From Macrostomum lignano (Eukaryota): a stretch of 58,622 nt of DNA. Made by a program: the position numbers and the translations under genes. The notes beneath the pieces are model-generated. The model made no database searches. It saw only the letters and a program-made list of their open reading frames with translations, and had not been told where the DNA came from. The stretch covers positions 1 to 58,622 of the forward strand of contig NIVC01004133.1 of assembly GCA_002269645.1 (NCBI GenBank), written 5' to 3'. Positions 9,816 to 58,622 of this stretch are shown in pieces (position 1 is the stretch's first letter; every line of letters starts with the position of its first letter).

Positions 9816-9878
9816 TGAGTGCAGTTACGAGTAATAGATGTCAGTAAGCCCGAATAAATGCACCCAAGCCAGCCGCAG

Positions 9879-11229: not shown

Positions 11230-11306
11230 GTGAGATTGTTTAAACTTCTTTACCTGCCAGTTTTGCTCAATTCATGGACCTCTGGAGATCTGGACTGGAC
11301 TCAACC

Positions 11307-11415
11307 GGGGATTGTAGCCTAGTGGTTAGAGCGTCAGACTCGCGACTGAAAGGTCGGGAGTTCGATTCTCGCCCCACTCGCTCGGAACAATCTGTGTCCT
11401 TGAGCAAGAACCATC
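11307..11415 (+). mobile_element. Truncated tRNA-derived CORE-like SINE (family B)
   Basis: A-box TAGCCTAGTGG, B-box AGTTCGATTCT, followed by TGTGTCCTTGAGCAAG shared with the copies at 11956 and 32757. Confidence 0.8.
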
Positions 11416-11431
11416 TCGTCAATACATTTTG

Positions 11432-11955
11432 CAGGGGTTTGCAGCCTAGTAGGGGTTTGCAGCCTAGTAGGGGTTTGTAGCCTAGTAGGGGTTTGCAGCC
11501 TAGTAGGGGTTTGCAGTCTAGTAGGGGGTTGCAGTCTAGTAGGAGGTTGCAGTCTGGTAGGAGGTTGCAGTCTAGTAGGAGGTTGCAGTCTAGTAGGGGT
11601 TTGTAGTCTAGTAGGAGGTTGCAGTCTAGTATGGGTTTGTAGCCTAGTAGGGGGTTGCAGTCTAGTAGGAGGTTGCAGTCTAGTAGGAGGTTGCAGTCTA
11701 GTAGGAGGTTGCAGTCTAGTAGGAGGTTGCAGTCTAGTAGGGGGTTGCAGTCTAGTAGGGGTTTGTAGCCTAGTAGGGGGTTGCAGTCTAGTAGGGGTTT
11801 GTAGTCTAGTAGGGGGTTGCAGTCTAGTAGGGGGTTGCAGCCTAGTAGGGGGTTGCAGTCTAGTAGGGGGTTGCAGCCTAGTAGGGGGTTGCAGTCTAGT
11901 AGGGGGTTGCAGCCTAGTAGGGGGTTGCAGTCTAGTAGGAGGTTGCAGTCTAGTA
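11432..11955. repeat. 18-bp minisatellite (GGGGGTTGCAGTCTAGTA)n resembling the SINE B 5' end
   Basis: Unit matches GGGGGTTGTAGCCTAGTG, the first 18 nt of the adjacent SINE at 11956. Confidence 0.9.
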
Positions 11956-12210
11956 GGGGGTTGTAGCCTAGTGGTCAGAGCGTCGGACTCAAGATTTGAA
12001 GGTCGGGGATTCGATTCCAATCCCACTGGAACAATCTGTGTCCTTGAGCAAGACACTCAAGTCTGGATTGCTTCAGTTCACCCAGCTGTAAAATGGGTGC
12101 CAGAATTATCTGGAGTAATTGAGGGTGTGTGGCGACCCCCCAATCCTTGGACTGAACAGCGGTACGCTGATGTTATCAGCCGAAAACCTTACTATCGGAG
12201 GAGGCCTACG
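11956..12210 (+). mobile_element. tRNA-derived CORE-like SINE (family B)
   Basis: tRNA-like head, then GTGTCCTTGAGCAAGACACT...CCCAGCTGTAAAATGGG, which resembles the MIR/CORE domain. Homologous to 32450-32757. Confidence 0.8.
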
Positions 12211-12352
12211 CTCGTAAATGGTGAATATGTGCAGGGCCGGCTTCCAATCCAGGTCTTTAGCTGTAGAGGTCCGTGATCTAATATTTGTTCTCCGCTTCTT
12301 TTCGTGCCAACGGTGCACTGTCTATCAATTAATCAATAAATCAATGTTTCAG

Positions 12353-12451
12353 AGCACACCAGCCCAGCTCTGGAGGAATTTATGGAACTAATTGCTACTA
12401 AAGTTTCGTTGAAAAAATTCGACAAATTCAAAGGCGGTTTGGACTCGAAGT
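12353..12451 (+). CDS. SIPA1L: SIPA1L-like RapGAP domain exon (not in the ORF track)
   Basis: TTTCAG|AG acceptor, phase 1. Encodes (E)HTSPALEEFMELIATKVSLKKFDKFKGGLDSK. Donor T|GTGAGT. Confidence 0.9.
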
Positions 12452-12646
12452 GTGAGTATAAGACTTGGCGTGACGCAAATGTGGGATCGCTGCTCCTACA
12501 ATCGCTGTATACAGAGGGGTCTAGTTCTGAGCATATATGAGCGGGGATAAGGGCCGCAAATAATCTCCGACCCTTAGCAACACGGGGGGGTATATTAATC
12601 CTTTTGACTTCATTCTCTTTTTCTTCATCAGCGGCAGCAGAATGCT

Positions 12647-12677
<31 letters not shown>

Positions 12678-13169
12678 TGCGTCTCTCTCTCTCCAGCCGA
12701 CAAAGGAAAACGCGGGGGAGGGAGTGAGATTAAGGCGGGGCAAATGCAGGGCAGGTAAGAATGCGTGATGAGCTGAGAAAGGGTAGGAAGAGAGCTGAGT
12801 GGGGATTTTCGAATGCGGACTTGCGGTACGCGGGCGGGCATCTGCGTGTAGGGAAGAGAGCTCGGGGTGTTTCGGCGTGTCAGTTTTCTTCTCGCCCTGA
12901 TTTCAGCGGCGGCTGCTGTAAGACAGAAAGAGACGGTAAGGCAGGGATGCGGGGTACATAGAGGCTGAACGCTCGCTTCTCTATCTGCAGCCGCTTCTCC
13001 GCCCCAGTTTGCCGGTTTTGCTATTAACAGATTTCTAGCCTTGCTTTCGCATAGCTCTCCCCATTGCTTGCATGGGGAAATGTTTTGTACATTGCTTTGC
13101 TACATAAATTTTGCTATTGCGATAGTCTTTTGGGAAAGAGAGCTCTCTGCTCCGCTCTGCGCCATCTCT

Positions 13170-14055
13170 GTCTGTCTAATCTACTTGTCTCTGTGCCTGA
13201 TCTACCTGTCTGTGTTCCTGATCTACCTGTCTGTGTGCTTGATCTACCTGTCTGTGTTCCTGATCTACCTGTCTGTGTTCCTGATCTACCTGTCTGTGTT
13301 CCTGATCTACCTGTCTGTGTTCCTGATCTACCTGTCTGTGTGCCTGATCTACCTGTCTGTATGCCTGATCTACCTGTCTGTGTGCCTGATCTACCTGTCT
13401 GTGTGCCTGATCTACCTGTCTGTATGCCTGATCTACCTGTCTGTATGCCTGATCTACCTGTCTGTGTGCCTGATCTACCTGTCTGTGTGCCTGATCTACC
13501 TGTCTGTGTTCCTAATCTACCTGTCTGTATGCCTGATCTACCTGTCTGTGTTCCTGATCTACCTGTCTGTGTTCCTGATCTATCTGTCTGTGTTCCTGAT
13601 CTACCTGTCTGTGTGCCTGATCTACCTGTCTGTGTGCCTGATCTACCTGTCTGTGTTCCTAATCTACCTGTCTGTATGCCTGATCTACCTGTCTGTGTGC
13701 CTGATCTACCTGTCTGTGTTCCTGATCTACCTGTCTGTGTTCCTGATCTACCTGTCTGTGTTCCTGATCTACCTGTCTGTGTTCCTGATCTACCTGTCTG
13801 TGTTCCTGATCTACCTGTCTGTGTTCCTGATCTACCTGTCTGTGTGCCTGATCTACCTGTCTGTATGCCTGATCTACCTGTCTGTATGCCTGATCTACCT
13901 GTCTGTGTGCCTGATCTACCTGTCTGTGTGCCTGATCTACCTGTCTGTGTGCCTGATCTACCTGTCTGTGTTCCTGATCTACCTGTCTGTGTTCCTGATC
14001 TACCTGTCTGTGTGCCTGATCTACCTGTCTGTATGCCTGATCTACCTGCCTGTAT
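13170..14055. repeat. 21-bp minisatellite (CCTGATCTACCTGTCTGTGT/G)n
   Basis: Tandem array; intronic. Confidence 0.95.
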
Positions 14056-14649
14056 CTCTCATTTCGGCCCGTAACAGTGACTTCAAAGGATTATATGGGA
14101 ATGCCCTATCTGATGTAAATGTCGGGGATCAACGCAAAATAATAAGCTTACAAGCAGCGAGAAGTTTGGTTTTCGTTTTTTATTTAAAATCAAGTTACAA
14201 CCAAGATTTATAATATTAACACGAACAGGGAGGCAGATTTTTATGCCAAACTAATGAGCAGGAGATACCCGCGTGGCTCTCTAGAGAACAGTTAAAGTCA
14301 TAAATTAGTTGGCCTTATTGTCAAATTTGTACTTTTATTTACATATATAGAATCTCGGTCTGTTGCCGGCAGGAGATGGCCAAGTAATTATCGTGCAGTG
14401 GATAGCAGTTCCTCATTTTTGTCAGTTTTCTCTCTATGTACAGGTTTTATAATCCCGTGACAGGCTATGAGACGCTGTGCGCCTCTTTCCCAACCGGTTG
14501 CTTCTCCCAACTACAATCGTCTCCTAGCATTAGCATTGGGAAGGGTAGGAATTAATAAGCGCACTATTTTTCTATGCCGCCAATAACTTTTCCTAATGAT
14601 TTTTATTGATTATATAATGTAGCACTTGTATAAGCAAATGGAATTGGGC

Positions 14650-16540
14650 TCTACCCTCTCCCATGATCCTCTACCCTCTCCCATGTTCCTCTACCCTCTC
14701 CCGTGTTCCTCTACCCTCTCCCGTCTTCCTCTACCCTCTCCCGTGTTCCTCTACCCTCTCCCGTGTTCCTCTACCCTCTCCCGTGTTCCTCTATCCTCTC
14801 CCGTGTTCCTCTACCCTCTCCCGTGTTCCTCTATCCTCTCCCGTGTTCCTCTACCATCTCCCGTGTTGCTCTACCCTCTCCCTTGTTGCTCTACCCTCCC
14901 CCGTGTTGCTCTACCCTCTCCCGTGTTCCTCTACCCTCTCCTGTCTTCCTCTACCCTCTCCCGTGTTCATCTACCCTCTCCCGTGTTCCTCTACCCTCTC
15001 CTGTCTTCCTCTACCCTCTCCCGTGTTCCTCTACCCTCTCCTGTCTTCCTCTACCCTCTCCCGTGTTCATCTACCCTCTCCCTTGTTGCTCTACCCTCTC
15101 CTACCTTCCTCTACCCTTTCCCTTGTTCCTCTACCCTCTCCCGTGTTCCTCTACCCTCTCCCGTGTTGCTCTACCCTCTCCCATGTTCCTCTACCCTCTC
15201 CCGTGTTCCCCTACCCTCTCCCATCTTCCTCTATCCTCTCCCGTGTTCCTCTACCCTCTCCCATGTTCCTCTACCCTCTCCCGTGTTGCTCTACCCTCTC
15301 CCTTGTTGCTCTACCCTCTCCCGTCTTCCTCTACCCCTCCCGTGTTCCTCTACCCTTTCCCGTGTTCCTCTACCCTCTCCCGTGTTCCTCTACCCTTTCC
15401 CGTGTTGCTCTACCCTCTCCCTTGTTGCTATACCCTCTCCCGTCTTCCTCTACCCCTCCCGTGTTCCTCTACCCTCTCCCGTGTTCCTCTACCCTTTCCC
15501 TTGTTGCTCTACCCTCTCCCGTGTTCCTCTACCCTCTCCCTTGTTGCTCTACCCTCTCCCTTGTTGCTCTACCCTCTCCCGTCTTCCTCTACCCTCTCCC
15601 GTCTTCCTCTACCCCTCCCGTGTTCCTCTACCCTCTCCCTTGTTCCTCTACCCTCTCCCGTGTTCCTCTACCCTCTCCCGTGTTCCTCTACCCTCTCCCT
15701 TGTTCCTCTACCCTCTCCCGTGTTCCTCTACCCTCTCCCGTGTTCCTCTACCCTTTCCCGTCTTCCTCTGCCCTCTACTGCTTTCCTGTTCCCTCTCCTG
15801 TGTTCCTCTACCCTCTCCCGTGTTCCTCTACCCTCCCCCGTGTTCCTCTACCCTCTCCCGTGTTGCTCTACCCTCTCCCGTGTTCCTCTACCCTCTCCCG
15901 TGTTGCTCTACCCTCTCCCGTATTCTCTACCCTTTCCCGTGTTCCTCTACCCTCTCCCGTCTTCCTCTACCCTCTCCCGTGTTCCTCTACCCTCTCCCGT
16001 GTTCCTCTACCCTCTCCCGTGTTCCTCTATCCTCTCCCGTGTTCCTCTACCCTCTCCCGTGTTCCTCTATCCTCTCCCGTGTTCCTCTACCATCTCCCGT
16101 GTTGCTCTACCCTCTCCCTTGTTGCTCTACCCTCCCCCGTGTTGCTCTACCCTCTCCCGTGTTCCTCTACCCTCTCCCGTCTTCCTCTACCCTCTCCCGT
16201 GTTCCTCTACCCTCTCCCGTGTTCCTCTACCCTCTCCCGTCTTCCTCTACCCTCTCCCGTGTTCCTCTACCCTCTCCCGTGTTCCTCTACCCTCTCCCGT
16301 CTTCCTCTACCCTTTCCCGTGTTCCTCTACCCTTTCCCGTCTTCCTCTGCCCTATACTGCTTTCCTGTTCCCTCTCCTGTGTTCCTCTACCCTCTCCCTT
16401 GTTCCTCTACCCTCTCCCGTGTTCCTCTACCCTCCCCCGTGTTCCTCTACCCTCTACTGTTTTCCTGTACCCTCCTGTCTTTTTACCCTCTACCGTCTTC
16501 ATTTGCCCTCTCCCACCTTCCTCTACCCTCTCCTGCCTTC
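14650..16540. repeat. 20-bp pyrimidine-rich minisatellite (CCGTGTTCCTCTACCCTCTC)n
   Basis: ~1.9-kb tandem array ending ~50 bp before the exon at 16590. Confidence 0.95.
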
Positions 16541-16589
16541 CACTTTACTCTCTACACTGAACTGTCACACCAAACCGTCACACCTGCAG

Positions 16590-16980
16590 GCACAGGCGAT
16601 TACACCTATTATACTACTATGGGCGACTGCGAGCTGGTATTCCACGTGTCCACCATGCTGCCCTATTCAAATACTAACCGTCAGCAGCTGCTGCGCAAGA
16701 AGCACATCGGTAACGATATCGTTACTATAGTGTTCCAGGAGCCGGGGGCTCTGGCGTTCTCTCCTAGGACGGTTCGCAGCCAGTTCCAGCACGTGTTCAT
16801 TGTGGTCCGGGCGCACAACCCCTGCACTAAGAAGCTCTACTATTCGGTGGCCGTAGCCCGCTCGGAGGAGATGCCGGCGTTTGGGCCACCGTTCTCAGCC
16901 GGGCACCAGTTCGCCAGGGAGCCAGCGTTCAGGGAGTTCCTCCTGCGCAAGATCATCAACGGGGAGAACGCCGCGTTCAG
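16590..16980 (+). CDS. SIPA1L: SIPA1L-like RapGAP catalytic exon
   Basis: [27 protein letters not shown] (catalytic Asn thumb), [29 protein letters not shown]. Acceptor CTGCAG| and donor AG|GTGACT. Confidence 0.95.
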
Positions 16981-16999
16981 GTGACTTGGAGTCGGGAAC

Positions 17000-17027
17000 T
17001 AAGACAGACAGACAGAGGAGTACAGAA

Positions 17028-17094
<67 letters not shown>

Positions 17095-17145
17095 GGCAGG
17101 CAGGCAGACAGACAGACAGACAGACAGACAGACAGGCAGGCAGGC

Positions 17146-17182
<37 letters not shown>

Positions 17183-17239
17183 GCCAGGCAGACAGACAGA
17201 CAGACAGACAGACAGACAGGCAGGCAGGCAGAGGAGTAC

Positions 17240-17278
<39 letters not shown>

Positions 17279-17341
17279 GGCAGGCAGGCAGGAAGGCAGG
17301 CAGGCATGCAGGCAGAGGAGTACAGAGACAGACAGACAGAC

Positions 17342-17386
<45 letters not shown>

Positions 17387-17415
17387 GGCAGGCAGGCAGG
17401 CAGGCAGAGGAGTAC

Positions 17416-17483
<68 letters not shown>

Positions 17484-17491
17484 AGGAGTAC

Positions 17492-17563
<72 letters not shown>

Positions 17564-17645
17564 AGGAGTACAGAGACAGACAGGCAAACAGACAGACAGA
17601 CAGACAGACAGGCAGGCAGACAGACAGACAGACGCAGACAGACAC
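17000..17645. repeat. (GACA/GGCA)n microsatellite with interspersed GAGGAGTACAGA units
   Basis: Simple repeat; intronic. Confidence 0.95.
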
Positions 17646-17798
17646 GGAACAGACAAAGCAACACACTGCCAAGGTAATCACAAAACTTGCAGACCAACAA
17701 ACAGATACAAAGCACACCAACAAAACAGACTAATACATAGGCTACTGACCAGTGCCAGTGGGCTTGACGCCATCCTCCCCTTCCCTGACATGCCTCAG

Positions 17799-18096
17799 GT
17801 CAGAGAAGTTCTGCCAGATGCAGAAACGCACCCGTGAGGACCGGCTCAAGGAGCTGGCTGAATCGCATTCCGCCGCCGCCACTATCGACATAAAATCGAC
17901 GCGCTCTCTGCTTGGCAGCGGCCGGCGTCGCAGCTCCAAGTCGCTGACTGCCAGCAACGACGCCGTCAACCGACTGGTTGTTGAACTCAATGAAGCTTTG
18001 AGATTCGAAGTCACCCTGACCGAGCCTAACAATAGAGAGATGCGCTGCGACCTGCTTATTGGCCGCACTTACCTGGCCCTGCAGTACGGACAACAG
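17799..18096 (+). CDS. SIPA1L: SIPA1L-like exon (end of RapGAP domain)
   Basis: CTCAG|G, phase 2 compatible. Encodes SEKFCQMQKRTREDRLKELAE...ALQYGQQ. Donor CAG|GTGAGG. Confidence 0.9.
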
Positions 18097-18156
18097 GTGA
18101 GGATTATGTTTTGTTTATAATTGCCCATTGGTTTATATTTTCTTTAAAAGTATTTA

Positions 18157-18540
18157 CCCGATGAGAATCTCATGAGAACCACCCGATGAGAACCGCCCCA
18201 TCACCAATGAGAATCGCCCCATCACCAACAAGAATCGCCCCATCACCAACAAGAATCGCCCCATCACCAATGAGAATCGCCCCATCACCAATGAGAATCG
18301 CCCCATCACCAATGAGAATCGCCCCATCACCAATGAGAATCGCCCCATCACCAACAAGAATCGCCCCATCACCAACAAGAATCGCCCCATCACCAACAAG
18401 AATCGCCCCATCACCAACAAGAATCGCCCCATCACCAACAAGAATCGCCCCATCACCAATGAGAATCGCCCCATCACCAATGAGAATCGCCCCATCACCA
18501 ATGAGAATCGCCCCATCACCAATGAGAACCGCCCCATTCC
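18157..18540. repeat. 21-bp minisatellite (AATGAGAATCGCCCCATCACC)n
   Basis: Tandem array; intronic. Confidence 0.95.
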
Positions 18541-18612
18541 GAATCGCCCTTTAGCCTAAGTCTGTTCCCAAAGCCAGCAGTTGCTATACCCGGCCAATTG
18601 GCCAATCCCCAG

Positions 18613-19217
18613 GTGCTGCTATCGATCCCGACCGGCTGCCTGCTGTCGTGGCGCACAGGCCAGGCGGGAGAGCTCACTGTGTATTACAATCGCGGCGAGC
18701 TGCTCCGCATGCGCTGCTCAACCGAAACCGCCTGCCAGTTGGCGGCCCGCCGCCTGGCCTGGCTTGGCGAACAGGAAACCCCCGGCGCTTGCCAGGCCAT
18801 CGAAGTCACGGTGCACCGCGTCACGGCCTACGAGGCCAGCCTGAGCTTTGGCGTACAAGCCGACGCTTTCTACGTCCGCTCTGTGGACTCGGCCGCCCTG
18901 CCGGACGTGGCTAAAAACTCTCGTTTAGTAGAATTGTGCGGCGTGCCGATCTGCGCCATGCCGGAGGCGCGCGTATTCAACCTGTTGCAGACCGAGGCCC
19001 AGTTGGCACTCGTGCTGGTGCCGCCAACTTCAAAAGGCGCCGTCCGTTGTTCGCAGGAGTTGCGCGATATTTTCCTGACTAATCGAGCGCACGCTCTGTT
19101 CTGCCCAGCCGGGGCTGCCGGCAGCGGACAGGGCAGCCCGGAGGTCGGCCCGGACCATGGCGACTGTCGCTTCCTGGATGCGTCTCTGCTGCGCAGCGGA
19201 GAAGCCGCGGTTTCCGG
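18613..19217 (+). CDS. SIPA1L: SIPA1L-like exon containing the PDZ domain
   Basis: CCCCAG|GTG, phase 0. LSFGVQAD...SRLVELCGVPI...VFNLLQTEAQLALVLVPP parallels the SIPA1L PDZ (GSRLVEIC...VVIIPP). Donor GG|GTGAGA. Confidence 0.9.
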
Positions 19218-19317
19218 GTGAGAAATTCTTTTCTTTTCCACTCAGGCAGATTCAATCCTCATTTGCCCTGTGGATATTTTCCCTTTGTTCATTCATCCGC
19301 CAACCGGGTGGTATAAC

Positions 19318-19770
19318 CGGGTTCCCCTGCTGTTTGTGCCATGAGCAGCCTCGGGTTCCCCTCCATGTTTGTGCCATGAGCAGCCTCGGGTTCCCCTGCT
19401 GTTTGTGCCATGAGCAGCCTCGGGTTCCCCCCATGTTTGTTCCATGAGCAGCCTCGGGTTTCCCTACGGTTTGTGCCATGAGCAGCCTCGGGTTCCCCTG
19501 CTGTTTGTGCCATGAGCAGCCTCGGGTTCCCCTCCATGTTTGTGCTATGAGCAGCCTCGGGTTCCCCTCCATGTTTGTGCTATGAGCAGCCTCGGGTTCC
19601 CCTGCTGTTTGTGCCATGAGCAGCCTCGGGTTCCCCATCCATGTTTGTGCTATGAGCAGCCTCGGGTTCCCCTGCTGTTTGTGCCATGAGCAGCCTCGGG
19701 TTCCCCTGCTGTTTGTGCCATGAGCAGCCTCGGGTTCCCCTGCTGTTTGTGCCATGAGCAGCCTCGGGTT
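19318..19770. repeat. 33-bp minisatellite (GGGTTCCCCTGCTGTTTGTGCCATGAGCAGCCT)n
   Basis: Tandem array; intronic. Confidence 0.95.
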
Positions 19771-20167
19771 TGTCCCCGTTTTTATCTAATAATAAGATTA
19801 TGAATAATGAATATCCTCTTTTTTGTATGGCATTGATTTGTAAGGCATTGAGGCTTTCTCGGTGCAGGATGCATCGGTGCTATGCCTAGGCTATTGTATT
19901 TGTTTAACAGAGCATGCAGGCAGGTGCCTCCTGCCAGTTGAAAACTCGTTTTGCATGACAAAACAGTGATCTGCATCTGCCTACGGGTTTTGGTTGAATG
20001 GCATTTCTTAATTGCTGTCCGGTCCATGATTTTTGCAGAGCAGCTCAAATTCTAGCTTAGAACTTCCAGTGTCACTACTTTAAGTAGCAGTGTTTGCGAC
20101 AAAAACCGATGTTTTTTGCGAGCTGTTTTCCTTGCATCATAAAGGTCTAATAAAAAACAGAGTTATC

Positions 20168-20480
20168 TCCCAGACTCCGGCCCTTCATCTGCCGGGACCT
20201 CATCCTCCCAGACTGGTTCTTCATCTGCCGGCTCCTCATCCTCCCAGACTCCGGCCCTTCATCTGGCTAGCACCTCATCCTCCCAGCCTCGGGCCCTTCA
20301 TCTGGCTAGCACCTTCTCCTCCCAGACTCCGGCCCTTCATCTGGCTAGCACCTCATCCTCCCAGCCTCCGGCCCTTCATCTGGCTAGCACCTCATCCTCC
20401 CAGCCTCCGGCCCTTCATCTGGCTAGCACCTCATCCTCCCAGACTTCGACCCTTCATCTGGCCGGCACCTCATCCTCCAA
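20168..20480. repeat. ~36-39 bp minisatellite (CTCCCAGACTCCGGCCCTTCATCTGGCTAGCACCTCATC)n
   Basis: Tandem array just upstream of the last SIPA1L exon. Confidence 0.9.
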
Positions 20481-20526
20481 GCCTCCAATTCTTCTGCATC
20501 TCATTTAGTCGCCTATCTCACTGCAG

Positions 20527-20947
20527 CGGCTCTCCTATTCGAGCGCCGCCTACTCAGCAACAGCCGCATCAAGCGGCCAACACACAGGACAAGCTGAAGC
20601 GCCTCATCAACAATGAGATTAGCGAAGATCAGTTGCGTCGCGAAGACGACTGGAGCCAGCTGGTCCGCAGCGCCAACCAGTTCGCCGCGGCCGCCGCCAA
20701 CTCAACCACTTCCTCTTCTAGTGGTCGCGGGACAGCGCAGAAGCAGCAGCCACGGTGCGGCCGCTGCCAGCAGCTCGAGGAGCAGCTCCGCGCCAGCGAG
20801 GCGGAGCGTCAGGCGCTGAAGCGTCGGCTAGTTGAATCGGCCGACGAGATTGAACGACTTCGGGCCCAAACAATGGAGGCAAAACAGGGCCTGATTCAGT
20901 TTACTGAGAAATTCTTCACTAGCATGGACACTCAGACTACATTGTGA
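20527..20947 (+). CDS. SIPA1L: SIPA1L-like terminal exon with C-terminal coiled coil
   Basis: CTGCAG|C, phase 2 matches the previous donor. QLEEQLRASEAERQALKRRL...LIQFTEKFF resembles the SIPA1L C-terminal ..KFTEW.F motif. Stop TGA at 20945-20947. Confidence 0.85.
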
Positions 20948-21089
20948 CCGTTGGATAGTTGTGCATGATCTCAGTCTATTTCGATTGTCAATATGCCCTG
21001 TTCTTCGGTTTCAACTTGTCTAATTTAGTGTGCTACATAAAGGTAGTAAAATCCTCAGTTTTCCTAAGGTTTGCAATTCACAGCCATAA

Positions 21090-50128: not shown

Positions 50129-50652
50129 ATGTTCGGCTACTTTAAGCGTCGCTTCTCGTCGGGCGACCTGCAAGGCGAAGCTGCGGACAGCCGTCAACAG
50201 CAGCAGCAGCAGCAGCAGCAACGGCAGCAACAGCCGCAGCAGCAGCCGCACCAGAGCATCGCCGGCTTCTTCAGCAGCATCACGTCCGGCGGGCCGCCGT
50301 CGTCATCTGGACCGCGACCGCCGCCGGCGCCGAGCGCTGGCAACAGCGGCAGCTACGGCGGAGGTCCACCACGCCGCGGTCCGTATCCGAGCGCGCCAAC
50401 GTCGCCTTCAAAATCGGCGCCGTTGCAAGCGCCGCCCCAGCAGCAACAACAGTCGGGTGGTGGGGGCGGCGCAGCCGGCATGTTCTCAGCTAGCGGCGTG
50501 GCCAACCTAACCGGTCAGCTCTCCGGTGCCACCGGTGGCCTCACCGGTCAGATCAGCAACACTATTCAGCGTGGCATCTTTGCCGCCAATAGGAACTACA
50601 ATCCAGACCGGTGCAAGGTGCTGCTGGTTATTGATGAGCCGCACACTGACTG
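50129..50652 (+). CDS. SYN: Synapsin exon 1 (domains A and B, start of C)
   Basis: MFGYFKRRFSSGDL (invertebrate domain A, PKA/CaMK site 1) and CKVLLVIDEPHTDW. Donor TG|GTGAGC. Confidence 0.95.
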
Positions 50653-51005
50653 GTGAGCGGAGCTGGGAGCGCGGCTAGCATACCTTCAGGTGTACCCAAT
50701 CTCAGTTATTGTCTTCATTACGCTTCTTAGAAACTTGATTGGAGCTATTGAAGGAGAAGGATTTACGTAAGATCTGTGCAATATCACAAAAATACTGAAT
50801 ACATAGAGACGTCGGTAACAAAACAGAGGCAGCAGAGGTAAACGTGTCTGACTTTCGTGGCATAGTATCTAGGCTCAGCCACCACGTGCGCAGCCACTTC
50901 AATTAGGGGCTCGTATGATTCTTGACCACGAGGACCAATCTCCAAGACCTTCGTGCAAACTAACTAAACATGCACTAACCTCGTGTATTAATCTCAATTC
51001 AACAG

Positions 51006-51063
51006 GTCAAAGTACTTCAGGAGTCGCAAGATAATGACAGACTGGGACATCCGAGTTGAACAA
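51006..51063 (+). CDS. SYN: Synapsin exon 2
   Basis: AACAG|G; encodes (W)SKYFRSRKIMTDWDIRVEQ; donor CAA|GTGAGT. Confidence 0.95.
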
Positions 51064-51521
51064 GTGAGTTTGCTCGATCTTTGATGCATTTATTATACCT
51101 TTTACCGAGAATACTTTCTCTGAGAACTTAACATTTTTTGTCGCCGAATACGGCAAGGGTCCTAAGTATACAAGGATTTTTTATGACAGACGGTCCAACC
51201 TGAGACGGTCAATTAGGTCTCAAGTACAGAGTTTCACTTAGTAGACAGGTTGTTCAGAGTTGCTCAGAGACATGATTTATAAGTTTTGCTATACAGTTGG
51301 GTTCAATGGTTTTAGGAAACGTTTCTCAATACATGTACGCTCGTACTACAAGGAGTATTCGGGCAGTCAGTGTGCCAGAGTGCAGAAATACTAAATATCC
51401 TTGCCCAACTAACACGCAGCGAGTAAGATCCCGAAGAAATTGCAGCCCGGGACTGAGCTGACGGGCTCGGCCGGGCCGGAATAATAATGTTTTCTCTTTC
51501 CTGCCGTCAATTTCTTGGCAG

Positions 51522-51613
51522 GCCGCATTCAGCGACATCTGCTTGGTCTCGTACGCCGGCCAGGGCTGCCTGGTGGAGATATCCACTGATCGATCTGGCA
51601 ATCGAGGCGGGCG
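51522..51613 (+). CDS. SYN: Synapsin exon 3
   Basis: GGCAG|GCC; encodes AAFSDICLVSYAGQGCLVEISTDRSGNRGG(R); donor CG|GTGAGC. Confidence 0.9.
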
Positions 51614-52134
51614 GTGAGCAAACACGGACCGTTCGAGCCCTTCCATCTATCCCCTTCTCTCCTCGGTCCTCTCTCCTTTTTCGCTTTTTTACCCCGACCT
51701 CCTGGCGGCTTCTATCCGAGCAACTGCTTTGGATGCGTTTCTTGAAGAAAGATTGGGAGTAGGATCCAGCGACACCCCCTTGGGAGAGAAGCTGCTCAAC
51801 CAACTGGCCAAGATTGAACTGCAGCAAGCTTGAGGCAAGAAAGTCATGCCATGATAAGCGTATTTTACAACAGCCTACTTCTCCAAGTAGTAGTATGTTT
51901 GTAACTGTTAAGGCCGAAGATCGATCGGTTAATATTTTATTAACATTTACGCCGTAAACTGGTTTTGGGTGAATCAAGTTTTAGTGCAGTCCCCTACCTT
52001 CCAGGGTTGTCCCCAGTCTGAACTGTCATAACTTTCTCATTGTCATAAGCCCGTTGCCTTGGACTTACCCTCTTGCTATCGAAAACGCATTTGCCGCTGC
52101 GTCACTGTCGGCCCCAAATCCGCGCCTACCGCAG

Positions 52135-52285
52135 GGCGTTCCGGCCGGACTTTGCACTGGTGCGGCAGCGCGTTCGCGACGCCAGCACAGACTGGCGGTC
52201 CATCGTGATCGGCCTGGCGCACGGCGGCGTGCCCACGGTTAACCAATCGAACGCTCTGTATGGTCTGGCCGAGAGGTCTTGGCTG
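52135..52285 (+). CDS. SYN: Synapsin exon 4
   Basis: (R)AFRPDFALVRQRVRDASTDWRSIVIGLAHGGVPTVNQSNALYGLAERSWL; phases compatible on both sides. Confidence 0.95.
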
Positions 52286-52484
52286 GTGCGCAAGACTTTT
52301 TTGCTTTTCGTACAGTTGTGCCGAATCCTTTTCCCGCTGAGTTTCAATAAAATGGCTTTTTGATTGAAATTTCGCTTAGTTAAATTTAGAATTTATAGCA
52401 GACAAATTTCGATTGAGTCATCAGCGATTCAATGTAAACATTAGTAACGCAACTAGCAATCTAGTGCCCCCTTCGGGGCGGCCA

Positions 52485-52980
52485 CCAGATAGCAAGCATC
52501 CCCCAGATAGCAAGCATCCCCCAGATAGCAAGCATCCCCCAGATAGCAAGCATCCCCCAGATAGCAAGCATCCCCCAGATAGCAAGCATCCCCAGATAGC
52601 AAGCATCCCCCAGATAGCAAGCATCCCCAGATAGCAAGCATCCCCAGATAGCAAGCATCCCCAGATAGCAAGCATCCCCAGATAGCAAGCATCCCCCAGA
52701 TAGCAAGCATGCCCCAGATAGCAAGCATCCCCCAGATAGCAAGCATGCCCCAGATAGCAAGCATCCCCCAGATAGCAAGCATGCCCCAGATAGCAAGCAT
52801 GCCCCAGATAGCAAGCATGCCCCAGATAGCAAGCATCCCCCAGATAGCAAGCATCCCCCAGATAGCAAGCATCCCCCAGATAGCAAGCATGCCCCAGATA
52901 GCAAGCATCCCCCAGATAGCAAGCATCCCCCAGATAGCAAGCATGCCCCAGATAGCAAGCATCCCCCAGATAGCAAGCAA
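52485..52980. repeat. 17-18 bp minisatellite (CCAGATAGCAAGCATCCC)n
   Basis: Tandem array in synapsin intron 4. Confidence 0.95.
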
Positions 52981-53224
52981 CAGATATTTTTTTGCCTGCC
53001 TCGAAATTCAATAGGACTTGCCTCCGCTCTTGACTTTTCCAAGGAACTGTCCATCATGAATCGCTGATGCCTAAAACCGAACTCGTCATCAAACTAATCA
53101 TCAAACCTTAATTGGCATAACGAAATCGCAATATTACTGAAATTAAACGGGAAATGTGTACTTTACGCTCAGCAACCTCAGTAAAATCATGCTTATTTCC
53201 GCACTACACTTTTGCCCATCTCAG

Positions 53225-53314
53225 TTCACTCATCTGGCCCAGATCCAGACCCGCGTTGGAAAGGAAAATTTCCCACTGGTTGAGCAGGCATTCTATCCGA
53301 AATATCAGGATTTG
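53225..53314 (+). CDS. SYN: Synapsin exon 5 (gene continues beyond the window)
   Basis: CTCAG|TTC; encodes FTHLAQIQTRVGKENFPLVEQAFYPKYQDL; donor TTG|GTGAGC. The expected next exon (PVVVK.GHAH) was not found in the window. Confidence 0.95.
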
Positions 53315-55305
53315 GTGAGCATTTATTCATCTAATGAGCTTTATCTGTTTGTAATGTTTTCGTTTCATCGCTATTGAGCATTAACAACCCTGAATAGCAT
53401 TTGGGAATGGTTTTTTCCTAAGGATGAATTGAATAAAATTGAATTGATTGCCACGAAGAAGCTGGCTGGGCGGAATCCGAGTCGGCATAGGGAGCCAAAG
53501 TTGCGCTAAACAGCCTTTCGCTGGCTTCCTTCTCCACCCCTCAGTTCCTGGTCGGTGCAAGACAGCTCGCAATGGGCCAAGCCGAGACCGGCCCTTCTGG
53601 CCTTCAATTGAAAAGGCGGGAAAGATTATCGGGAAAGCGAGGGTCCAGATAGCCAAAGCCCTCCTCTGTTCCCAGCAGGATTAGCCCAATTCTCCGGCAA
53701 TCAAGCCCTGCTTCAGGAGGGAGCCGCATCCAGCTTCCCGTAGGATGGTTGGGAAACAGGCGAGAGATAGGAGTTAGGCTTTCCTCATCCGCGCTTAGAT
53801 TGCCGCTATCGCGGGGCATCGCCCTATTCGTTACCGGGGAGGGGGCTACTGGGTCCGGCTGCCTCGTGTACGCCCGCGCCAGGAGAATAGGCTGGCTGGG
53901 TAGCAAAGCCCGAGCGGGAAACCGACAGTTCGCACACCGTAAGCGGAAATCTGGAGCCTTACTTGAATACAGATTCGGCTCTCGCCTAAGATTCGAGAGG
54001 AGTCCCTGTGCCTCCCTCCTCCCCCCCTCACCCCGAATATGCCTCCTCGATCCGCGCCCCTCGTCAGCTATAGCTACCTTCACAGACAGCCAGAAAGGTT
54101 GAAGACGGAGGGAGGAGAGAGCCAGAAGGAAAGATACACAATGGAAGACCCGCCAGATTTGACCCCCCCTATGGCTGCTGACGCATATGAATCGCTATCT
54201 TCAAGCAGTTTCTGTCTCTCTTGTTATGAATACTCTATCCCGCTATCCAATCGAGCGAACCAATATAATATAGTAACGGTACCTGGCAACACGCATGAGC
54301 CGTGCCCCCCCCCGTCAGTACATAGGTCGATAGATACAATGGCGCAAGCCTTCCAAGGCGAACGGGGCAGACCTTTAAGAAGGAAAGAAGATGCATGCTA
54401 TAGGGACGCTGCCAGCAGCGCAGTCTAGTGCACGAATACTTGATTTCGTCAGCAGTCTAAACGTGCCAGCGGCTGCCCCACCTGATTGAAAGTACTGCCA
54501 GTCATGTGCAGTAAAATTCGCCGCAAATTCAACAATGCTTTTAAAAAATCAAACAGCAACACACGGATTTTAATTCTACATTTGCCGAAAACATGAAAAG
54601 AAAAACGATTTGTCGCAGTCCCGGCCTTGTAGTGACTACTTTGTGTATTTTTATCTTTTACTTCTTAAGCGCAGACGGTGAGGAAAAGGATGGCTACAAT
54701 TTGCAACAGTACGAACGAGAGGTTGCAGAAGCCATTGCTTAAAATTGCGAGGTCAAATTGTGCAACTTTTGCTGTTGACAGATGTTTGAATGAAAAAAGT
54801 CGAGCACAACAATTAAAAATTGATTCGAACTTGATAAGGTCGCTTCGAGAAATGGGATGGCAGTTTCTAGAGATCGTAATGATTTGCTTTATGTAGTAGA
54901 CAGTAATAAATGAGGTAAATAAGCAGCTGGTGAAACAGTGAGAAAAGTTAGGCGAAAGAGAAAAAATGTTTCAAATTTAGCAGTACATCTGTAGCGTCGG
55001 ATGTATTAATGGAATGGGTCAGCGAGTCCGCCGCAGGTTCAGGTCGAACCCGGGCTGCGTATTTTAGCGATGGACGAAGAAAAGATCTACAGTTGTAAAT
55101 AGAGAAAAGCTGGCAATTACAGATCTGACAAAAACGCACTGAGTCTAGGTCGCTTGCTATGAGCCACATGAGCTTCCGTGATCCGTTTAGATAGCAGAGG
55201 TCGCATTATCTAGCAAAGTATCGGGTTGGAGACCACAGTATCCTAACATTGCACAGGGTCAGAGAATGCAGTGCTATATCTTACCAAACCTATGTTTTTT
55301 AGTTA

Positions 55306-55588
55306 GTTTTACAGGCAAGGGGGCTGTGTGCACCCTGGCGCACTTTAAGCGGCCTTTGTCACACAACTGGCGAGAGGCACACACAGGCACAGGCACACAC
55401 TCACACAGGAGTGTACCGTGGCACTAACTTTATTAATCGTTGTTGGGCATGTACACTTCACTGTGCCTTGGGAGTTGGCCTTCAAGAGCGGTAATTGCAC
55501 GAGCAGAGCCAAGCCGAGATTCCAATTTAGTCACAAATTAATGTGACTGCACTTGGAATCGAGCCTGGGCCGCTGGCACATTAGAGCG
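55306..55588 (-). mobile_element. 5'-truncated SINE family A copy
   Basis: Reverse complement aligns with 5870-6190 (GGCTCGATTCCAAGTGCAGTCACATTAATT...GTGCGCCAGGGTGCACA). Confidence 0.85.
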
Positions 55589-57249
55589 CCACTCTTGACT
55601 ACTATAGGCTACCGCACTCGTGAAGATATACCAATATCTTTTTGGAAAAACCTTAAGGCATGGTTTTGACTATCTAAATTACTAGTTACGAACAAAGTTT
55701 TCAAGTTTTCACGCTCAGTTAGTTTCACGCGGCTAACTCAGTGCCACTACACGAAATTTCTTACAAAAGAACACTGTCAAAAAACGGAGGAAAAGTCGGA
55801 GCGAAAAAAATGTAAGCAAAAATAGGCAAACAAGCAGTAGTACGGTACGAGTTTACGAGCAGTGTGGGACTTCTATTTTGATCGCAGCGCTGCTACTGCA
55901 AACAGTTTTATAGTCAACCGCTAAAATATTCCCACCGACTAACAAAATGAACTGACGATAAAAAGCATTGTTTACAAAGATGTGTATAGCTTTAAAGTAC
56001 GTACTGCTCAGTATTGAACTAACCCTATTCAAAAGTCTACGAACTGGTCGATGCGATAAGGCGTGTCCATGTGCTCAGTGCAGCTGTCAGCTTGCGCCCA
56101 GTTTCAAACGACAAAAAGACCTATATTTTGCGAACTGTTTGCTATACCAATTATTCGAAAATAAACGATAGCAAATACTACAACGAAGGCGAGCAGTAAA
56201 ATAAAATGGAACAGGAGATGGCGGTTCAGAGGACCATGACCAATATAGCTTGTGAGGTAGCAGATTATTGCTTATGTCTTTAGACATACAGCGCATAGCA
56301 TGCGGGTAATAAATAAACAGCAGTATAAACAACGATTTGAGAGCGGCAAGCAGCCTAGGAACGATGGGTTCATTCCTTGTCGCATCTATGATTAACTATA
56401 TAGATGATGCAAGGCAAATCTGCTCAGAAAACAATGACGCAATCGTAATGCCGATGATTGGTGCATAAAGCAGGTTAACATAGGTTAGCTACAAATTGTC
56501 GCCTCTAAACTTCAGGGAGCATCTGGGCTAGCTGATGAGGTGGGAGTGGACGGGAGTCTAGACTGCATCATCATGATTTCCAGCGCCAGATAAATAAATT
56601 TACAAGATGCTTGTCTTTTCTATTTCCTGTAAGTCACTAATCTCGATCATAGGTTTTTGATACTAAAAAATATTAAAAATTCTCAAAACTGTTTATTTAA
56701 ACCTGATGCATAAAGCTGCGGCTCCCCAACAACAGTGGGGATTATATACTTTCTAATCTGGGCGCTAAAAACCAGAACAGTATACAAAAGTTGCTTCGTT
56801 CGTTCTTGGCTAGGAAAATTGCAATTCTGTAGACCATATGTATTGTATAAAAAATGAGACCTATACTGTATGCTTGCAAAGTCTTTCATATATGACGAAG
56901 CTACCGTAAAAATAGGCGCTCGTAATGGGTTTAGAAAAAGCGATAAGGGAGGGATCAGGCAAGTCAATTTAGTTGATGGGTGACTCTGCAATTCGAGGCA
57001 TGGCAGAGCCGTTTGCTCGATCGCGAGGTTCGAAAAACACCTCCGAGATTACGGTTTTGGATAGCTATTGAGTTGTGGCAGTGCTTATCCTCACGGTACC
57101 GGAAGAATAAGAACTGTCTTTCTTGACTTGTCGGGATTAATCAAATAGAATTTTATTCTTATAATTGCTTAACTTCAAATTTTGAGTTGTATAAATAAAC
57201 TTTACGGAGAATAATTTCGAATCGCCCACGAGTTTAAGTATAGCATGCT

Positions 57250-57481
57250 TCACCCCTTGATGCCTTTCCAATTGGCTTCATACATCACATTGTTCTCCTG
57301 GCATTTCGTATAGTGACTCAAACTGGTCGTGTGCCATTCGCAGCGCCTGGCATAGGTGTACGGATTGTAGTGCATGGCGCAGTAGGCGTACCTGGGATAG
57401 CAGGCGCTGGGGTCCCTGTCCAGGTTGTAACCGGCAGGTGACCATATCTGTGCTGCCGACCCGGTCTCCAAATGAAGCAAT
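57250..57481 (-). CDS. TIMP: TIMP-like gene, terminal exon (C-terminal domain), nested antisense in synapsin intron 5
   Basis: IWSPAG...SACYPRYAYCAMH...RRCEWHTTSLSHYTKC parallels the invertebrate TIMP C-domain as recalled for Drosophila (CKWSPFGKC..YSACMPH...RCRW...YRKC). GC3-rich codons. Stop at 57250-57252; minus-strand AATAAA at 57152-57157. Confidence 0.75.
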
Positions 57482-57569
57482 CTGCGTGATTGAAAGTGTG
57501 CTGTGCTTTATTTTGCTTTATCTCATAATATGAGCTGTTTAGTTTCCTAATAATTTGCTTCCTAATAAT

Positions 57570-58310
57570 CAGTTTCTTAATCATCAGTTTCTTAATCATC
57601 AGTTTCTTAATCATCAGTTTCTTAATCATCAGTTTCTTAATCATCAGTTTCTTAATCATCAGTTTCTTAATCATTAGCTTCTTAATCATCAGTTTCTTAA
57701 TCATTAGCTTCTTAATCATTAGTTTCTTAATCATCAGTTTCTTAATCATTAGCTTCTTAATCATCAGTTTCTTAATCATTAGTTTCTAATCATCAGTTTC
57801 TTAATCATTAGTTTCTTAAGCATTAGTTTCTTAATCATTAGTTTCTTAATCATTAGCTTCTTAATCATCAGTTTCTTAATCATCAGTTTCTTAATCATCA
57901 GTTTCTTAATCATTAGTTTCTTAATAATTAGTTTCTTAATCATTAGTTTCTTAAGCATTAGTTTCTTAGTCGTGAGTTTCTTAAGCATTAGCTTCTTAAT
58001 CATTAGCGTCTTAATCATTAGCGTCTTAATCATTAGCTGCTTAATCATTAGCTTCTTAACATTAGTTTCTTTATCATTAGTTTCTAATCATTAGTTTCTT
58101 AAGCATTAGTTTCTTAGTCGTGAGTTTCTTAAGCATTAGCTTCTTAATCATTAGCGTCTTAATCATTAGCGTCTTAATCATTAGCTGCTTAATCATTAGC
58201 TTCTTAAGCATTAGTTTTTTATCATTAGTTTCCTAATCATTAGTTTCTTAATCATTAATTTCAATCATTGGTTTCTCAGTAATAAATTTCTCAAATCTCA
58301 ATCATTAGTT
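57570..58310. repeat. 15-bp minisatellite (ATCAGTTTCTTAATC)n
   Basis: Tandem array in the putative TIMP intron. Confidence 0.95.
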
Positions 58311-58494
58311 TCTTAAGTTTTTGGGGTGCTCTCAAAACTAGAACTTTTCTAGTTTCATAAATTACGAAATTTTTTGTTAACTGTATGGCAATGAAGATAA
58401 TACCAAGCTGAGAAAATTAAAAATAATAAGTCAAAGTAGTTGATAGATCGTGTCTGTAAACTTTGTCTGCTAAGTGCTAAACAACAGTCCGTAC

Positions 58495-58598
58495 CATGCA
58501 CACAGCTATAGCCAAGCCAATAACCTGAAATTGTTTTCACTCTCAAAGTCGCTCGCTGCAGGACAGACATCCAGTCTCCAAAGCCGGCATTAGAATGA
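58495..58598 (-). CDS. TIMP: TIMP-like gene, penultimate exon (N/C-domain junction)
   Basis: DWMSVLQRATL...SGYWLGYSCVH fits the TIMP [LM]S..Q[RK]..L...Y..G..C pattern. Donor G|GTACGG at 58495/58494. 5' boundary uncertain. Confidence 0.55.
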
Positions 58599-58622
58599 CT
58601 TGAAAACTATTGTTATTGTCGC

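What the first reader, a model, noticed from the sequence alone, without database searches (positions are those of the whole stretch)
53315..58622. TIMP gene nested antisense in synapsin intron 5
Seen: after synapsin exon 5, two minus-strand coding segments (58495-58598, 57250-57481) carry TIMP-type motifs: MS..QR..L...Y..G..C, then WSP.G, CY..Y..C, RCEW, Y.KC, a stop and a polyA signal. Known: TIMP genes are nested antisense in a synapsin intron in vertebrates (SYN1/TIMP1, SYN2/TIMP4, SYN3/TIMP3) and Drosophila. Inference: the ancient bilaterian nesting persists at the equivalent intron in this lineage, where the exons are too divergent and too short for the ORF track to reveal.
Basis: partly seen in the sequence, partly recalled or inferred. 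Interest (0 to 1): 0.8.

Follow-up and report, generated by a model that had tools for sequence, protein, structure and literature searches.

The report
TIMP gene nested in flatworm synapsin
The window's end holds the last exon of a metalloproteinase-inhibitor (TIMP) gene lying backwards inside intron 5 of a flatworm (Macrostomum lignano) synapsin gene, an arrangement already known from sea anemones to humans, so this is a correct but largely ordinary finding.

Summary
The DNA is Macrostomum lignano (free-living flatworm). The plus strand carries synapsin coding exons 1-5 (50129-53314). On the minus strand, 57250-57481 is the fifth and last coding exon of an RNA-supported, already deposited TIMP-family gene (PAA89245.1 and its near-identical copies). 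That protein passes Pfam TIMP and has C-x-C, HPQQAFC and 12 cysteines.

On three homologous public contigs, TIMP exons 1-4 lie 1.9-3 kb beyond the window's end. Synapsin exon 6 lies beyond them, so the nesting is real. The host intron has the same position and phase as the TIMP-bearing intron of a blowfly and a chiton.

Three corrections:
It is absent from the protein, out of phase, and interrupted by a stop in one copy.
- The "WSP.G" motif is an off-frame reading.
- The window has one extra T (57430) that breaks the exon's frame. All three reference copies lack it. It is probably an assembly indel.

The kind is known, and this appears to be the first flatworm example. In passing: M. lignano has three diverged synapsin/TIMP nested pairs, one with an unannotated TIMP. 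A trematode has the same intron empty.

The parts
50129..50652 (+). Synapsin coding exon 1 (524 nt). Starts MFGYFKRRFSSGDL (A-domain kinase site) and ends ...VLLVIDEPHTD-W.
   Evidence: ORF; splice donor gtgagc and in-frame joined translation; Pfam Synapsin.
51006..51063 (+). Synapsin coding exon 2 (58 nt, SKYFRSRKIMTDWDIRVEQ).
   Evidence: AG/GT sites, frame kept. 100% match in L001 and L002. The 58-nt exon is also present in Echinostoma synapsin.
51522..51613 (+). Synapsin coding exon 3 (92 nt).
52135..52285 (+). Synapsin coding exon 4 (151 nt, AFRPDFALVRQ...AERSWL).
   Evidence: (Pfam Synapsin, E 1.4e-11).
53225..53314 (+). Synapsin coding exon 5 (90 nt, 30 codons, FTHLAQIQTRVGKENFPLVEQAFYPKYQDL). 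It ends in phase 0.
   Evidence: (Synapsin_C). The homologous 90-nt exon precedes the same intron in Echinostoma and Lucilia.
53315..58622 (+). First 5.3 kb of synapsin intron 5, the host intron (about 10.2 kb on the reference contigs). The window ends inside it.
   Evidence: On L003, synapsin exon 5 is at 18385-18296 (-), the TIMP gene at 10001-14365 (+) and synapsin exon 6 at about 8055-7996 (-). Window position 58622 corresponds to L003 12985.
57250..57481 (-). TIMP coding exon 5 of 5, including the TGA stop. It encodes IASFGDRVGSTDMVTCR-YNLDRDPSACYPRYAYCAMHYNPYTYARRCEWHTTSLSHYTKCQENNVMYEANWKGIKG, which holds 5 of the 12 conserved cysteines. It is 232 nt here and 231 nt in the reference copies.
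57429..57430 (-). TT where all three Mlig_3_7 copies have a single T (ccggTtac). This +1 insertion shifts the exon's frame after ...VTCR.
   Evidence: Alignment; two-frame tblastn. Of 20 window-versus-L003 differences, 16 are short indels (15 of 1 bp, one of 2 bp), many in homopolymer or dinucleotide runs.
57152..57157 (-). AATAAA hexamer 93-98 nt after the stop codon; a candidate polyadenylation signal.
   Evidence: Sequence only; usage not shown.
57482..58622 (-). 3' part of TIMP intron 4 (2994-3120 nt in the reference copies; gtagga...cacgcag).
57539..58276 (.). 15-bp minisatellite (about 50 copies, consensus TTAGTTTCTTAATCA) inside TIMP intron 4.
58495..58598 (-). Rejected: it is an intronic chance ORF.

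Best explanation
Positions 57250-57481 (minus strand) are the last of five coding exons, followed by the 3' UTR, of a Macrostomum lignano TIMP-family gene (locus family Mlig025997). The gene lies antisense and wholly inside the phase-0 intron 5 of a synapsin gene whose exons 1-5 occupy 50129-53314 on the plus strand.

Shown:
- the identity of the exon;
- the five-exon GT-AG structure;
- the TIMP profile match;
- the C-x-C/HPQQAFC motif and the 12-cysteine pattern of the full product;
- the position of TIMP exons 1-4 and of synapsin exon 6 just beyond the window on three homologous contigs;
- the exact positional and phase homology of the host intron with TIMP-bearing introns in an insect and a mollusc.

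Inferred from the family:
- The product is secreted.
- It inhibits metzincin metalloproteinases by inserting its N-terminal Cys/C-x-C ridge into the active site. The C-terminal subdomain encoded here (cysteines 8-12) modulates partner binding.
- It is transcribed from its own promoter, independently of the neuronal host gene.

The extra T at 57430, which breaks the frame in this window only, is most probably (about 75%) a homopolymer-type assembly error rather than biology.
For: - The exhaustive representative search finds P0001 (PAA89245.1, M. lignano), with 59/60 C-terminal residues identical, E 1.1e-34.
- P0001 and its paralogue P0002 pass Pfam TIMP (32.8 and 42.1 bits against a cut-off of 23.1) and NTR.
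- All 12 cysteines are invariant between the 37%-identical paralogues, and CPCRPH..HPQ.AFC is present.
- An exact spliced mapping gives five exons of 325/113/142/176/231 nt with GT-AG introns in L001, L002 and L003.
- The window aligns to these contigs at 96-99.6% identity.
- Synapsin exons 5 and 6 flank the TIMP gene on the opposite strand in all three contigs.
- Host identity: Pfam Synapsin E 1.3e-39.
- The same intron hosts an annotated antisense TIMP in Lucilia sericata and Liolophura sinensis.
- Foldseek top hits of the (weak) model are TIMP-1, TIMP-2 and NTR domains.
- The public gene models are built from RNA-seq (PMC5730564).
- The nesting is described from Nematostella to human (PMC2825198).
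- The CDS is 0.1-0.2% diverged among copies, against about 1% for intron 4 and the 3' flank in the more divergent copy pairs.
Against: - Only one exon of the TIMP gene is inside the window. The rest is inferred from 96-99.6% identical contigs, not from the window's own continuation.
- The window-encoded peptide alone matches no Pfam or PDB entry.
- The Pfam TIMP match of the full protein covers only the N-domain (profile positions 3-116 of 183).
- The AlphaFold model is poor (mean pLDDT 43, C-terminal part below 50), so the fold of the exon-5-encoded part is untested.
- As it stands, the window's frame is broken by the extra T.
- By eye, about 25 residues separate the hydrophobic signal-like segment from Cys-89 in P0001. 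A free N-terminal cysteine, which the canonical inhibitory mechanism needs, would therefore require extra processing or a different start.
Confidence: 0.92

Rival explanations
1. The extra T at 57430 is real. This copy, one of several near-identical homeologous copies in a neopolyploid genome, is a frameshifted allele or young pseudogene. Its product keeps the inhibitory N-domain but replaces the last 60 residues (four cysteines) with 51 unrelated ones.
For: - The window sequence as given has the insertion.
- The genome carries redundant 95-100% identical copies, so loss of one would be tolerated (PMC5730564).
- No indel disturbs the 915 nt of synapsin coding sequence in the same window.
Against: - All three polished Mlig_3_7 copies and the ML2-based model P0004 read in frame.
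- The rest of the exon is 100% identical.
- Window-versus-L003 differences are 16 indels against 4 substitutions, a pattern typical of long-read consensus error rather than of polymorphism.
Confidence: 0.2
2. One reading: 58495-58598 is spliced to 57250-57481 and together they encode the TIMP C-terminal domain.
For: - The segment has AG and GT sites at its ends.
- It shows a loose S-x-[IL]-Q-x-x-x-L-R resemblance to the true exon-4 motif SNIQSRYLR.
Against: - The true exon with that motif (..SNIQSRYLRGGVYENSCLKCQ) is 1.9 kb beyond the window.
- The segment is 104 nt long. It reads a stop when entered in phase 0, and its own frame joins exon 5 in a non-TIMP frame.
- It has a stop codon in copy L001 and a frame-changing indel relative to L002 and L003.
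- The joined peptide finds nothing beyond exon 5 (the match starts at query residue 43).
Confidence: 0.02
3. The gene encodes an NTR-module protein that is not a TIMP (for example a netrin, sFRP, PCOLCE or complement-type module), and the nesting is coincidental.
For: - Pfam NTR also matches (29.6 bits).
- UniProt names it only 'NTR domain-containing protein'.
- Foldseek also lists PCOLCE and complement C345C domains.
Against: - The TIMP profile scores higher and passes its cut-off.
- C-x-C, HPQQAFC, exactly 12 cysteines and five exons are all TIMP hallmarks.
- The gene sits in the very intron that holds TIMP in insects and molluscs.
- A 2023 survey counts two canonical TIMPs in M. lignano (PMC10755359).
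Confidence: 0.04

Closest known systems
Drosophila Syn/Timp and vertebrate SYN1/TIMP1, SYN2/TIMP4, SYN3/TIMP3 nested pairs (Pohar et al. 1999; Candiani et al. 2010, PMC2825198)
   Same: - The TIMP is antisense and wholly inside one intron of the synapsin C-domain region.
- The guest has five coding exons.
- The intron position is conserved. Mouse Timp4 lies in intron 5 of Syn2 (title cited in PMC2599898).
   Different: - This is a flatworm host. Platyhelminthes were not in the 2010 survey (no mention).
- The protein is far diverged: it is found only by profile, and its C-domain has no Pfam coverage.
- It has a long N-terminal extension before the C-x-C.
Lucilia sericata (L008) and Liolophura sinensis (L007) annotated synapsin loci with an antisense TIMP
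   Same: - The host intron follows the exon ending ...FPL[IV]EQ.[FY][FY]P.... and precedes ...FP.V.K.GH.H.G.
- That exon is 30 codons long in M. lignano and Echinostoma and 35 codons (105 nt) in Lucilia.
- The intron is phase 0 in Lucilia and M. lignano.
   Different: - Those TIMPs are 210-221 aa and hit Pfam TIMP strongly.
- Their host introns are 13.6-24.7 kb, against about 10.2 kb here.
Echinostoma caproni (trematode) synapsin, L005
   Same: It has the same exon architecture (58-nt and 90-nt exons) and the same phase-0 intron.
   Different: The intron is only 687 bp and holds no TIMP. No TIMP-like sequence was found in the 30-kb locus.
Human TIMP-1 and TIMP-2 (PDB 9sop, 1br9, 2e2d, 1gxd)
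   Same: - Best structural matches of the predicted model (E about 1e-5).
- N-TIMP-1 is the only relevant PDB sequence match.
- They share the 12-cysteine pattern.
   Different: - Sequence identity is 15-20%.
- There is a three-residue insertion between Cys3 and Cys13 (RPHNPHHPQQAFC).
- The model confidence is too low to compare the C-terminal subdomains.

Membership tests
TIMP (Pfam PF00965) | Profile match above the curated threshold | tested here: met
   Full-length products P0001 (32.8 bits) and P0002 (42.1 bits) exceed the cut-off of 23.1. The window-encoded C-terminal peptide alone gives no hit.
TIMP (Pfam PF00965) | N-terminal C-x-C followed by HPQxAFC | tested here: met
   GCPCRPHNPHHPQQAFC in exon 1 of L001-L003 (C-L-C in two copies). 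This exon lies outside the window.
TIMP (Pfam PF00965) | Cys1 becomes the free N-terminus directly after signal-peptide cleavage | tested here: inconclusive
   By eye, about 25 residues (P0001) or about 18 residues (P0002) lie between the hydrophobic segment and the C-x-C. No signal-peptide predictor was available.
TIMP (Pfam PF00965) | Twelve conserved cysteines (six disulfides, in two subdomains) | tested here: met
   C89, 91, 104, 167, 207, 248, 251, 268, 279, 286, 299 and 312 are all invariant between the 37%-identical paralogues. Five of them are encoded by the window's exon. Disulfide connectivity is not testable here.
TIMP (Pfam PF00965) | OB-fold N-domain plus C-terminal subdomain structure | tested here: inconclusive
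   AlphaFold2 mean pLDDT is 43, and only residues 101-220 are moderately confident. The Foldseek top hits are nevertheless TIMP-1, TIMP-2 and NTR domains.
TIMP (Pfam PF00965) | Inhibits matrix metalloproteinases/ADAMs | not testable with these tools
   Biochemical assay needed.
Synapsin/TIMP nested gene pair | Host gene is a synapsin | tested here: met
   The joined window exons score Pfam Synapsin 135 bits (E 1.3e-39) plus Synapsin_C. They are 50% identical to mollusc and nemertean synapsins.
Synapsin/TIMP nested gene pair | Guest lies on the opposite strand, entirely within one host intron | tested here: met
   Shown on L001, L002 and L003. In the window itself only the guest's 3' end is visible.
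Synapsin/TIMP nested gene pair | Host intron is homologous in position and phase to that of other animals | tested here: met
   The phase-0 intron after ...FPLVEQAFYPKYQDL is matched in Lucilia (exact splice map) and Liolophura (tblastn boundaries). The human exon map was not tested; the literature was used instead.
Synapsin/TIMP nested gene pair | Guest is transcribed | not tested
   No RNA data are available here. Indirect support: the Mlig025997 models come from a genome-guided RNA-seq assembly (PMC5730564).

The most novel reading that the evidence does not exclude
Macrostomum lignano keeps three anciently diverged synapsin/TIMP nested pairs: the window's pair, the L004 pair and the L006 pair. 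TIMP identities are 44-50% over conserved exon parts. The third TIMP is unannotated. Host and guest identities rank in the same order across the pairs. Host and guest were therefore duplicated together and stayed nested each time, independently of the vertebrate SYN1-3/TIMP1,3,4 expansion. A parasitic flatworm, by contrast, has the same intron empty. That pattern would argue for a selective link between the two genes rather than mere inertia.
Probability: 0.55. Interest if true: 0.4.

Novelty: new member of a known kind. Interest (0 to 1): 0.25.

Why it matters
The finding adds Platyhelminthes to the phyla in which the synapsin/TIMP nest is documented. It shows that the nest sits at the identical phase-0 intron in a flatworm, a fly and a chiton, which strengthens the case that the arrangement predates bilaterians.

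On the practical side, it flags three annotation points:
- The host synapsin is only half annotated publicly, because the models break at the nest intron.
- The guest is labelled 'hypothetical protein'.
- The window's copy carries a probable 1-bp assembly error in a coding exon.

The mechanism and the arrangement are textbook-known, so the result is confirmatory rather than surprising.

Tried and rejected
- **Joined peptide.** Only the exhaustive representative search worked.
- **Alternative acceptor.** The true protein shows it is wrong.
- **Cassette or alternative first exon.** I considered 58495-58598 in these roles. Rejected on phase, an in-frame stop and lack of conservation.
- **Word-index search with P0001.** It returned only itself, so no deep alignment was available.
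- **Structure prediction.** AlphaFold2 on a 3-sequence alignment was low confidence, so no claim is made about the C-terminal fold.
- **Lineus synapsin.** The look-up was not on record.
- **Liolophura splice map.** The exact spliced mapping failed, so tblastn boundaries were used.
- **Other ORFs in 53315-57250.** No Pfam hits.
- **Third TIMP.** The conceptual product of L006, lacking exon 2, gave no Pfam hit.
- **RNA scans.** Rfam and ARAGORN found nothing in the finding's range.
Full report
**What the sequence shows**

On the minus strand, 57481-57250 is preceded by a good acceptor (cacgcag|) and ends in TGA. An AATAAA hexamer lies 93-98 nt downstream. Frame 2 of this stretch reads ...YNLDRDPSACYPRYAYCAMHYNPYTYARRCEWHTTSLSHYTKCQENNVMYEANWKGIKG*. 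Frame 1 reads IASFGDRVGSTDMVTCR... from the acceptor.

On the plus strand there are five GT-AG exons: 50129-50652, 51006-51063, 51522-51613, 52135-52285 and 53225-53314. They join in frame to a 305-residue N-terminal part of a synapsin. This part scores Pfam Synapsin E 1.3e-39 and reaches Synapsin_C profile position 44. The finding's start coordinate, 53315, is the first base of synapsin intron 5.

I joined the two segments through the only in-frame acceptor I could find. The joined peptide matched no Pfam family, no PDB chain of relevance and no word-index candidate.

An exhaustive HMMER scan of 1.84 billion representatives found two proteins. P0001 matched at E 1.1e-34, but only from query residue 43 onward. 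P0002 matched at E 3e-4. Both are Macrostomum lignano proteins (PAA89245.1 and PAA59871.1). They are labelled 'hypothetical' or 'NTR domain-containing', and both pass Pfam TIMP and NTR.

P0001 carries GCPCRPHNPHHPQQAFC and exactly 12 cysteines from the C-x-C onward. All 12 are invariant in the 37%-identical P0002. A 2023 survey already counts two canonical TIMPs in M. lignano (PMC10755359).

**Gene structure and nesting**

P0001 and its near-identical copies are encoded on three contigs of assembly Mlig_3_7 (L001, L002, L003). The window aligns to them at 96-99.6% identity and is closest to L003.

An exact spliced mapping gives five coding exons of 325/113/142/176/231 nt with GT-AG introns in all three contigs. 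The last exon corresponds to window 57481-57250.

The window's end (58622) corresponds to L003 position 12985, which is inside the roughly 3-kb intron 4. So exon 4 lies 1.9 kb beyond the window, and the start codon (with the C-x-C exon) lies 3.0 kb beyond it.

On the opposite strand of the same contigs, synapsin exon 5 lies on one side of the TIMP gene. Synapsin exon 6 (..DTYPLVMKIGHAHGGLGKV) and the later exons lie on the other side. The TIMP gene is therefore wholly inside synapsin intron 5, which is about 10.2 kb long, and is antisense to it.

The Mlig gene models derive from a genome-guided RNA-seq assembly (PMC5730564). This is indirect evidence of transcription.

**What was wrong in the observation**

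The segment 58495-58598 is not part of the protein.

- Exon 4 ends in phase 0, and exon 5 starts in phase 0 at 57481.
- A 104-nt insert would break the frame, and entered in phase 0 it reads S-F-stop.
- In copy L001 its ORF contains a stop. It differs from the window by three substitutions and one indel in 104 nt. L002 and L003 differ by a frame-changing G.
- The true CDS differs by only 1-2 of 987 nt among copies.

The 'WSP.G' motif is a frame-2 reading upstream of a frameshift. The real reading there is ..STDMVTCR, whose cysteine is conserved in P0002.

**The frameshift**

The window has ccggTTac where L001, L002 and L003 all have ccggTac. The rest of the exon and its flanks are identical. 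As written, the window's copy would read ..VTCRLQPGQ.. to a stop and would lose four cysteines.

Over 5.6 kb, the window differs from L003 by 4 substitutions and 16 short indels, many of them in homopolymer or dinucleotide runs. Mlig_3_7 was Pilon-polished with Illumina and RNA-seq data. An ML2-based model also reads in frame (P0004).

I judge the extra T to be an assembly artefact (about 75%). A real homeolog-specific frameshift in this redundant, neopolyploid genome is not excluded.

**Comparison with the known arrangement**

The nesting of TIMP in a synapsin intron is described from Nematostella to human, with nematodes as the exception (PMC2825198). Mouse Timp4 lies in intron 5 of Syn2. 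That survey does not mention flatworms.

I tested positional homology directly.

- In the blowfly Lucilia sericata, an annotated antisense TIMP (210 aa) lies in the phase-0 intron after ..FPLIEQSFFPSAKYL.
- In the chiton Liolophura sinensis, an annotated antisense TIMP (221 aa) lies in the intron after ..FPLIEQAYYPNHKEM(L).
- Both correspond to the M. lignano intron after ..FPLVEQAFYPKYQDL.
- In the trematode Echinostoma caproni, the same phase-0 intron follows the same 90-nt exon. It is only 687 bp long, and no TIMP-like sequence is detectable in the 30-kb locus.

**Structure**

AlphaFold2 on the three available sequences gave a poor model: mean pLDDT 43, with the part encoded by the window below 50. 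Its best Foldseek matches are nevertheless TIMP-1, TIMP-2 and NTR modules.

I treat this as weak support for the N-domain fold. It gives no information on the C-terminal subdomain.

**Mechanism**

By family knowledge, a TIMP is secreted. Its N-terminal cysteine and C-x-C ridge occupy the metalloproteinase active site, and the C-terminal subdomain tunes partner binding. None of this was tested here.

One caveat: in both annotated paralogues a spacer of roughly 18-25 residues separates the hydrophobic signal-like segment from the C-x-C. Exposing Cys1 would therefore need extra processing or another start codon.

**Seen in passing**

M. lignano has three diverged synapsin/TIMP nests.

- L004 holds P0002 between synapsin-like exons 4/5 and exon 6 (Pfam Synapsin_C 50.5 bits).
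- L006 holds the synapsin paralogue P0044. It has an unannotated TIMP-like gene on the opposite strand, in the equivalent intron.
- Host and guest identities rank the same way: pair A-C is closest, then B-C, then A-B. This is compatible with co-duplication, but the data are thin.

**Verdict**

One of the two exons is wrong. The window's copy carries a probable 1-bp error. The arrangement is a new phylum-level instance of a well-known nest.

Noticed in passing
L004 (NIVC01002217.1) 1500-23100: A second, diverged synapsin/TIMP nest in M. lignano. TIMP paralogue P0002 (10001-16953, +) lies between synapsin-like exons 4 and 5 (23050-22898; ORF 21963-21808) and exon 6 (about 1601-1551) on the minus strand. 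The joined synapsin-like exons pass Pfam Synapsin_C and Synapsin.
   Followed up: partly
L006 (NIVC01000006.1) 6805-9227 minus strand, within synapsin paralogue P0044 (4041-12328 +): A third nest. Unannotated TIMP-like exons (signal peptide plus GAPGCSCRPHNPQHPQMAFC; ..CSWVAYWPKKR..CSRCQ; ..CEWHTDRLRDYRRC..) lie inside the equivalent intron of a third synapsin paralogue. Exon 2 was not located, and the conceptual product gave no Pfam hit. Published counts give only two TIMPs for this species.
   Followed up: partly
L005 (Echinostoma caproni UZAN01044411.1) 11303-11989: In this trematode the homologous phase-0 synapsin intron is only 687 bp. No TIMP-like sequence was found in the 30-kb locus, which suggests the guest was lost or moved in parasitic flatworms.
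   Followed up: partly
window 50129-53314 and L001 4400-8060: The host synapsin is only half annotated publicly. P0046 (UniRef, 317 aa) starts right after the nest intron. No called gene covers exons 1-5 on L001-L003. The nest intron seems to break gene models, and Drosophila partial models also start there.
   Followed up: partly
window 52126-52347 minus strand: The ML2-based model P0004 (406 aa) reads past the TIMP stop and fuses the TIMP to the antisense translation of synapsin exon 4 (..KRIRHNCTKSKKVLRTSQDL..). This is a gene-prediction artefact in a public database.
   Followed up: yes
L001/L002/L003 exon 1, CDS position 269: The C-x-C motif is C-P-C in copy g1 but C-L-C in copies g2 and g3 (a single C to T change). 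A spacer of about 18-25 residues separates the signal-like segment from Cys1 in both annotated paralogues. This is unusual for TIMPs, which need a free N-terminal Cys.
   Followed up: no
L001-L003, TIMP gene and flanks: Mosaic similarity among the three copies. L001 is nearly identical to L003 in introns 1-4. L002 is nearly identical to L003 in the 3' flank. This hints at recombination or gene conversion between homeologous copies, or at assembly chimeras.
   Followed up: no
window ~9858-21000 plus strand: An upstream neighbour on the same strand as synapsin is a Rap-GAP gene. Pfam Rap_GAP scores 145 bits at about 16700-16984 and Rap-GAP_dimer hits in 9858-11240. Long coding-looking minisatellite arrays are interspersed.
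   Followed up: partly
window 3835-4791 minus strand: A 319-aa ORF with a hAT-family dimerisation domain (Pfam 28.7 bits). It is probably a hAT transposase remnant.
   Followed up: no
window 11957-12025 plus strand: Rfam tRNA hit (37.2 bits) that ARAGORN does not call. It sits at the edge of a tandem repeat (ORF 11334-12056), so it may be a tRNA-derived repeat element.
   Followed up: no
window 52440-52990, 57539-58276 and many sites in 11000-47500: Very dense minisatellites (for example a unit of about 17-18 bp, CCCCAGATAGCAAGCAT, in synapsin intron 4, and a 15-bp unit in TIMP intron 4). They create many long spurious ORFs on both strands.
   Followed up: no
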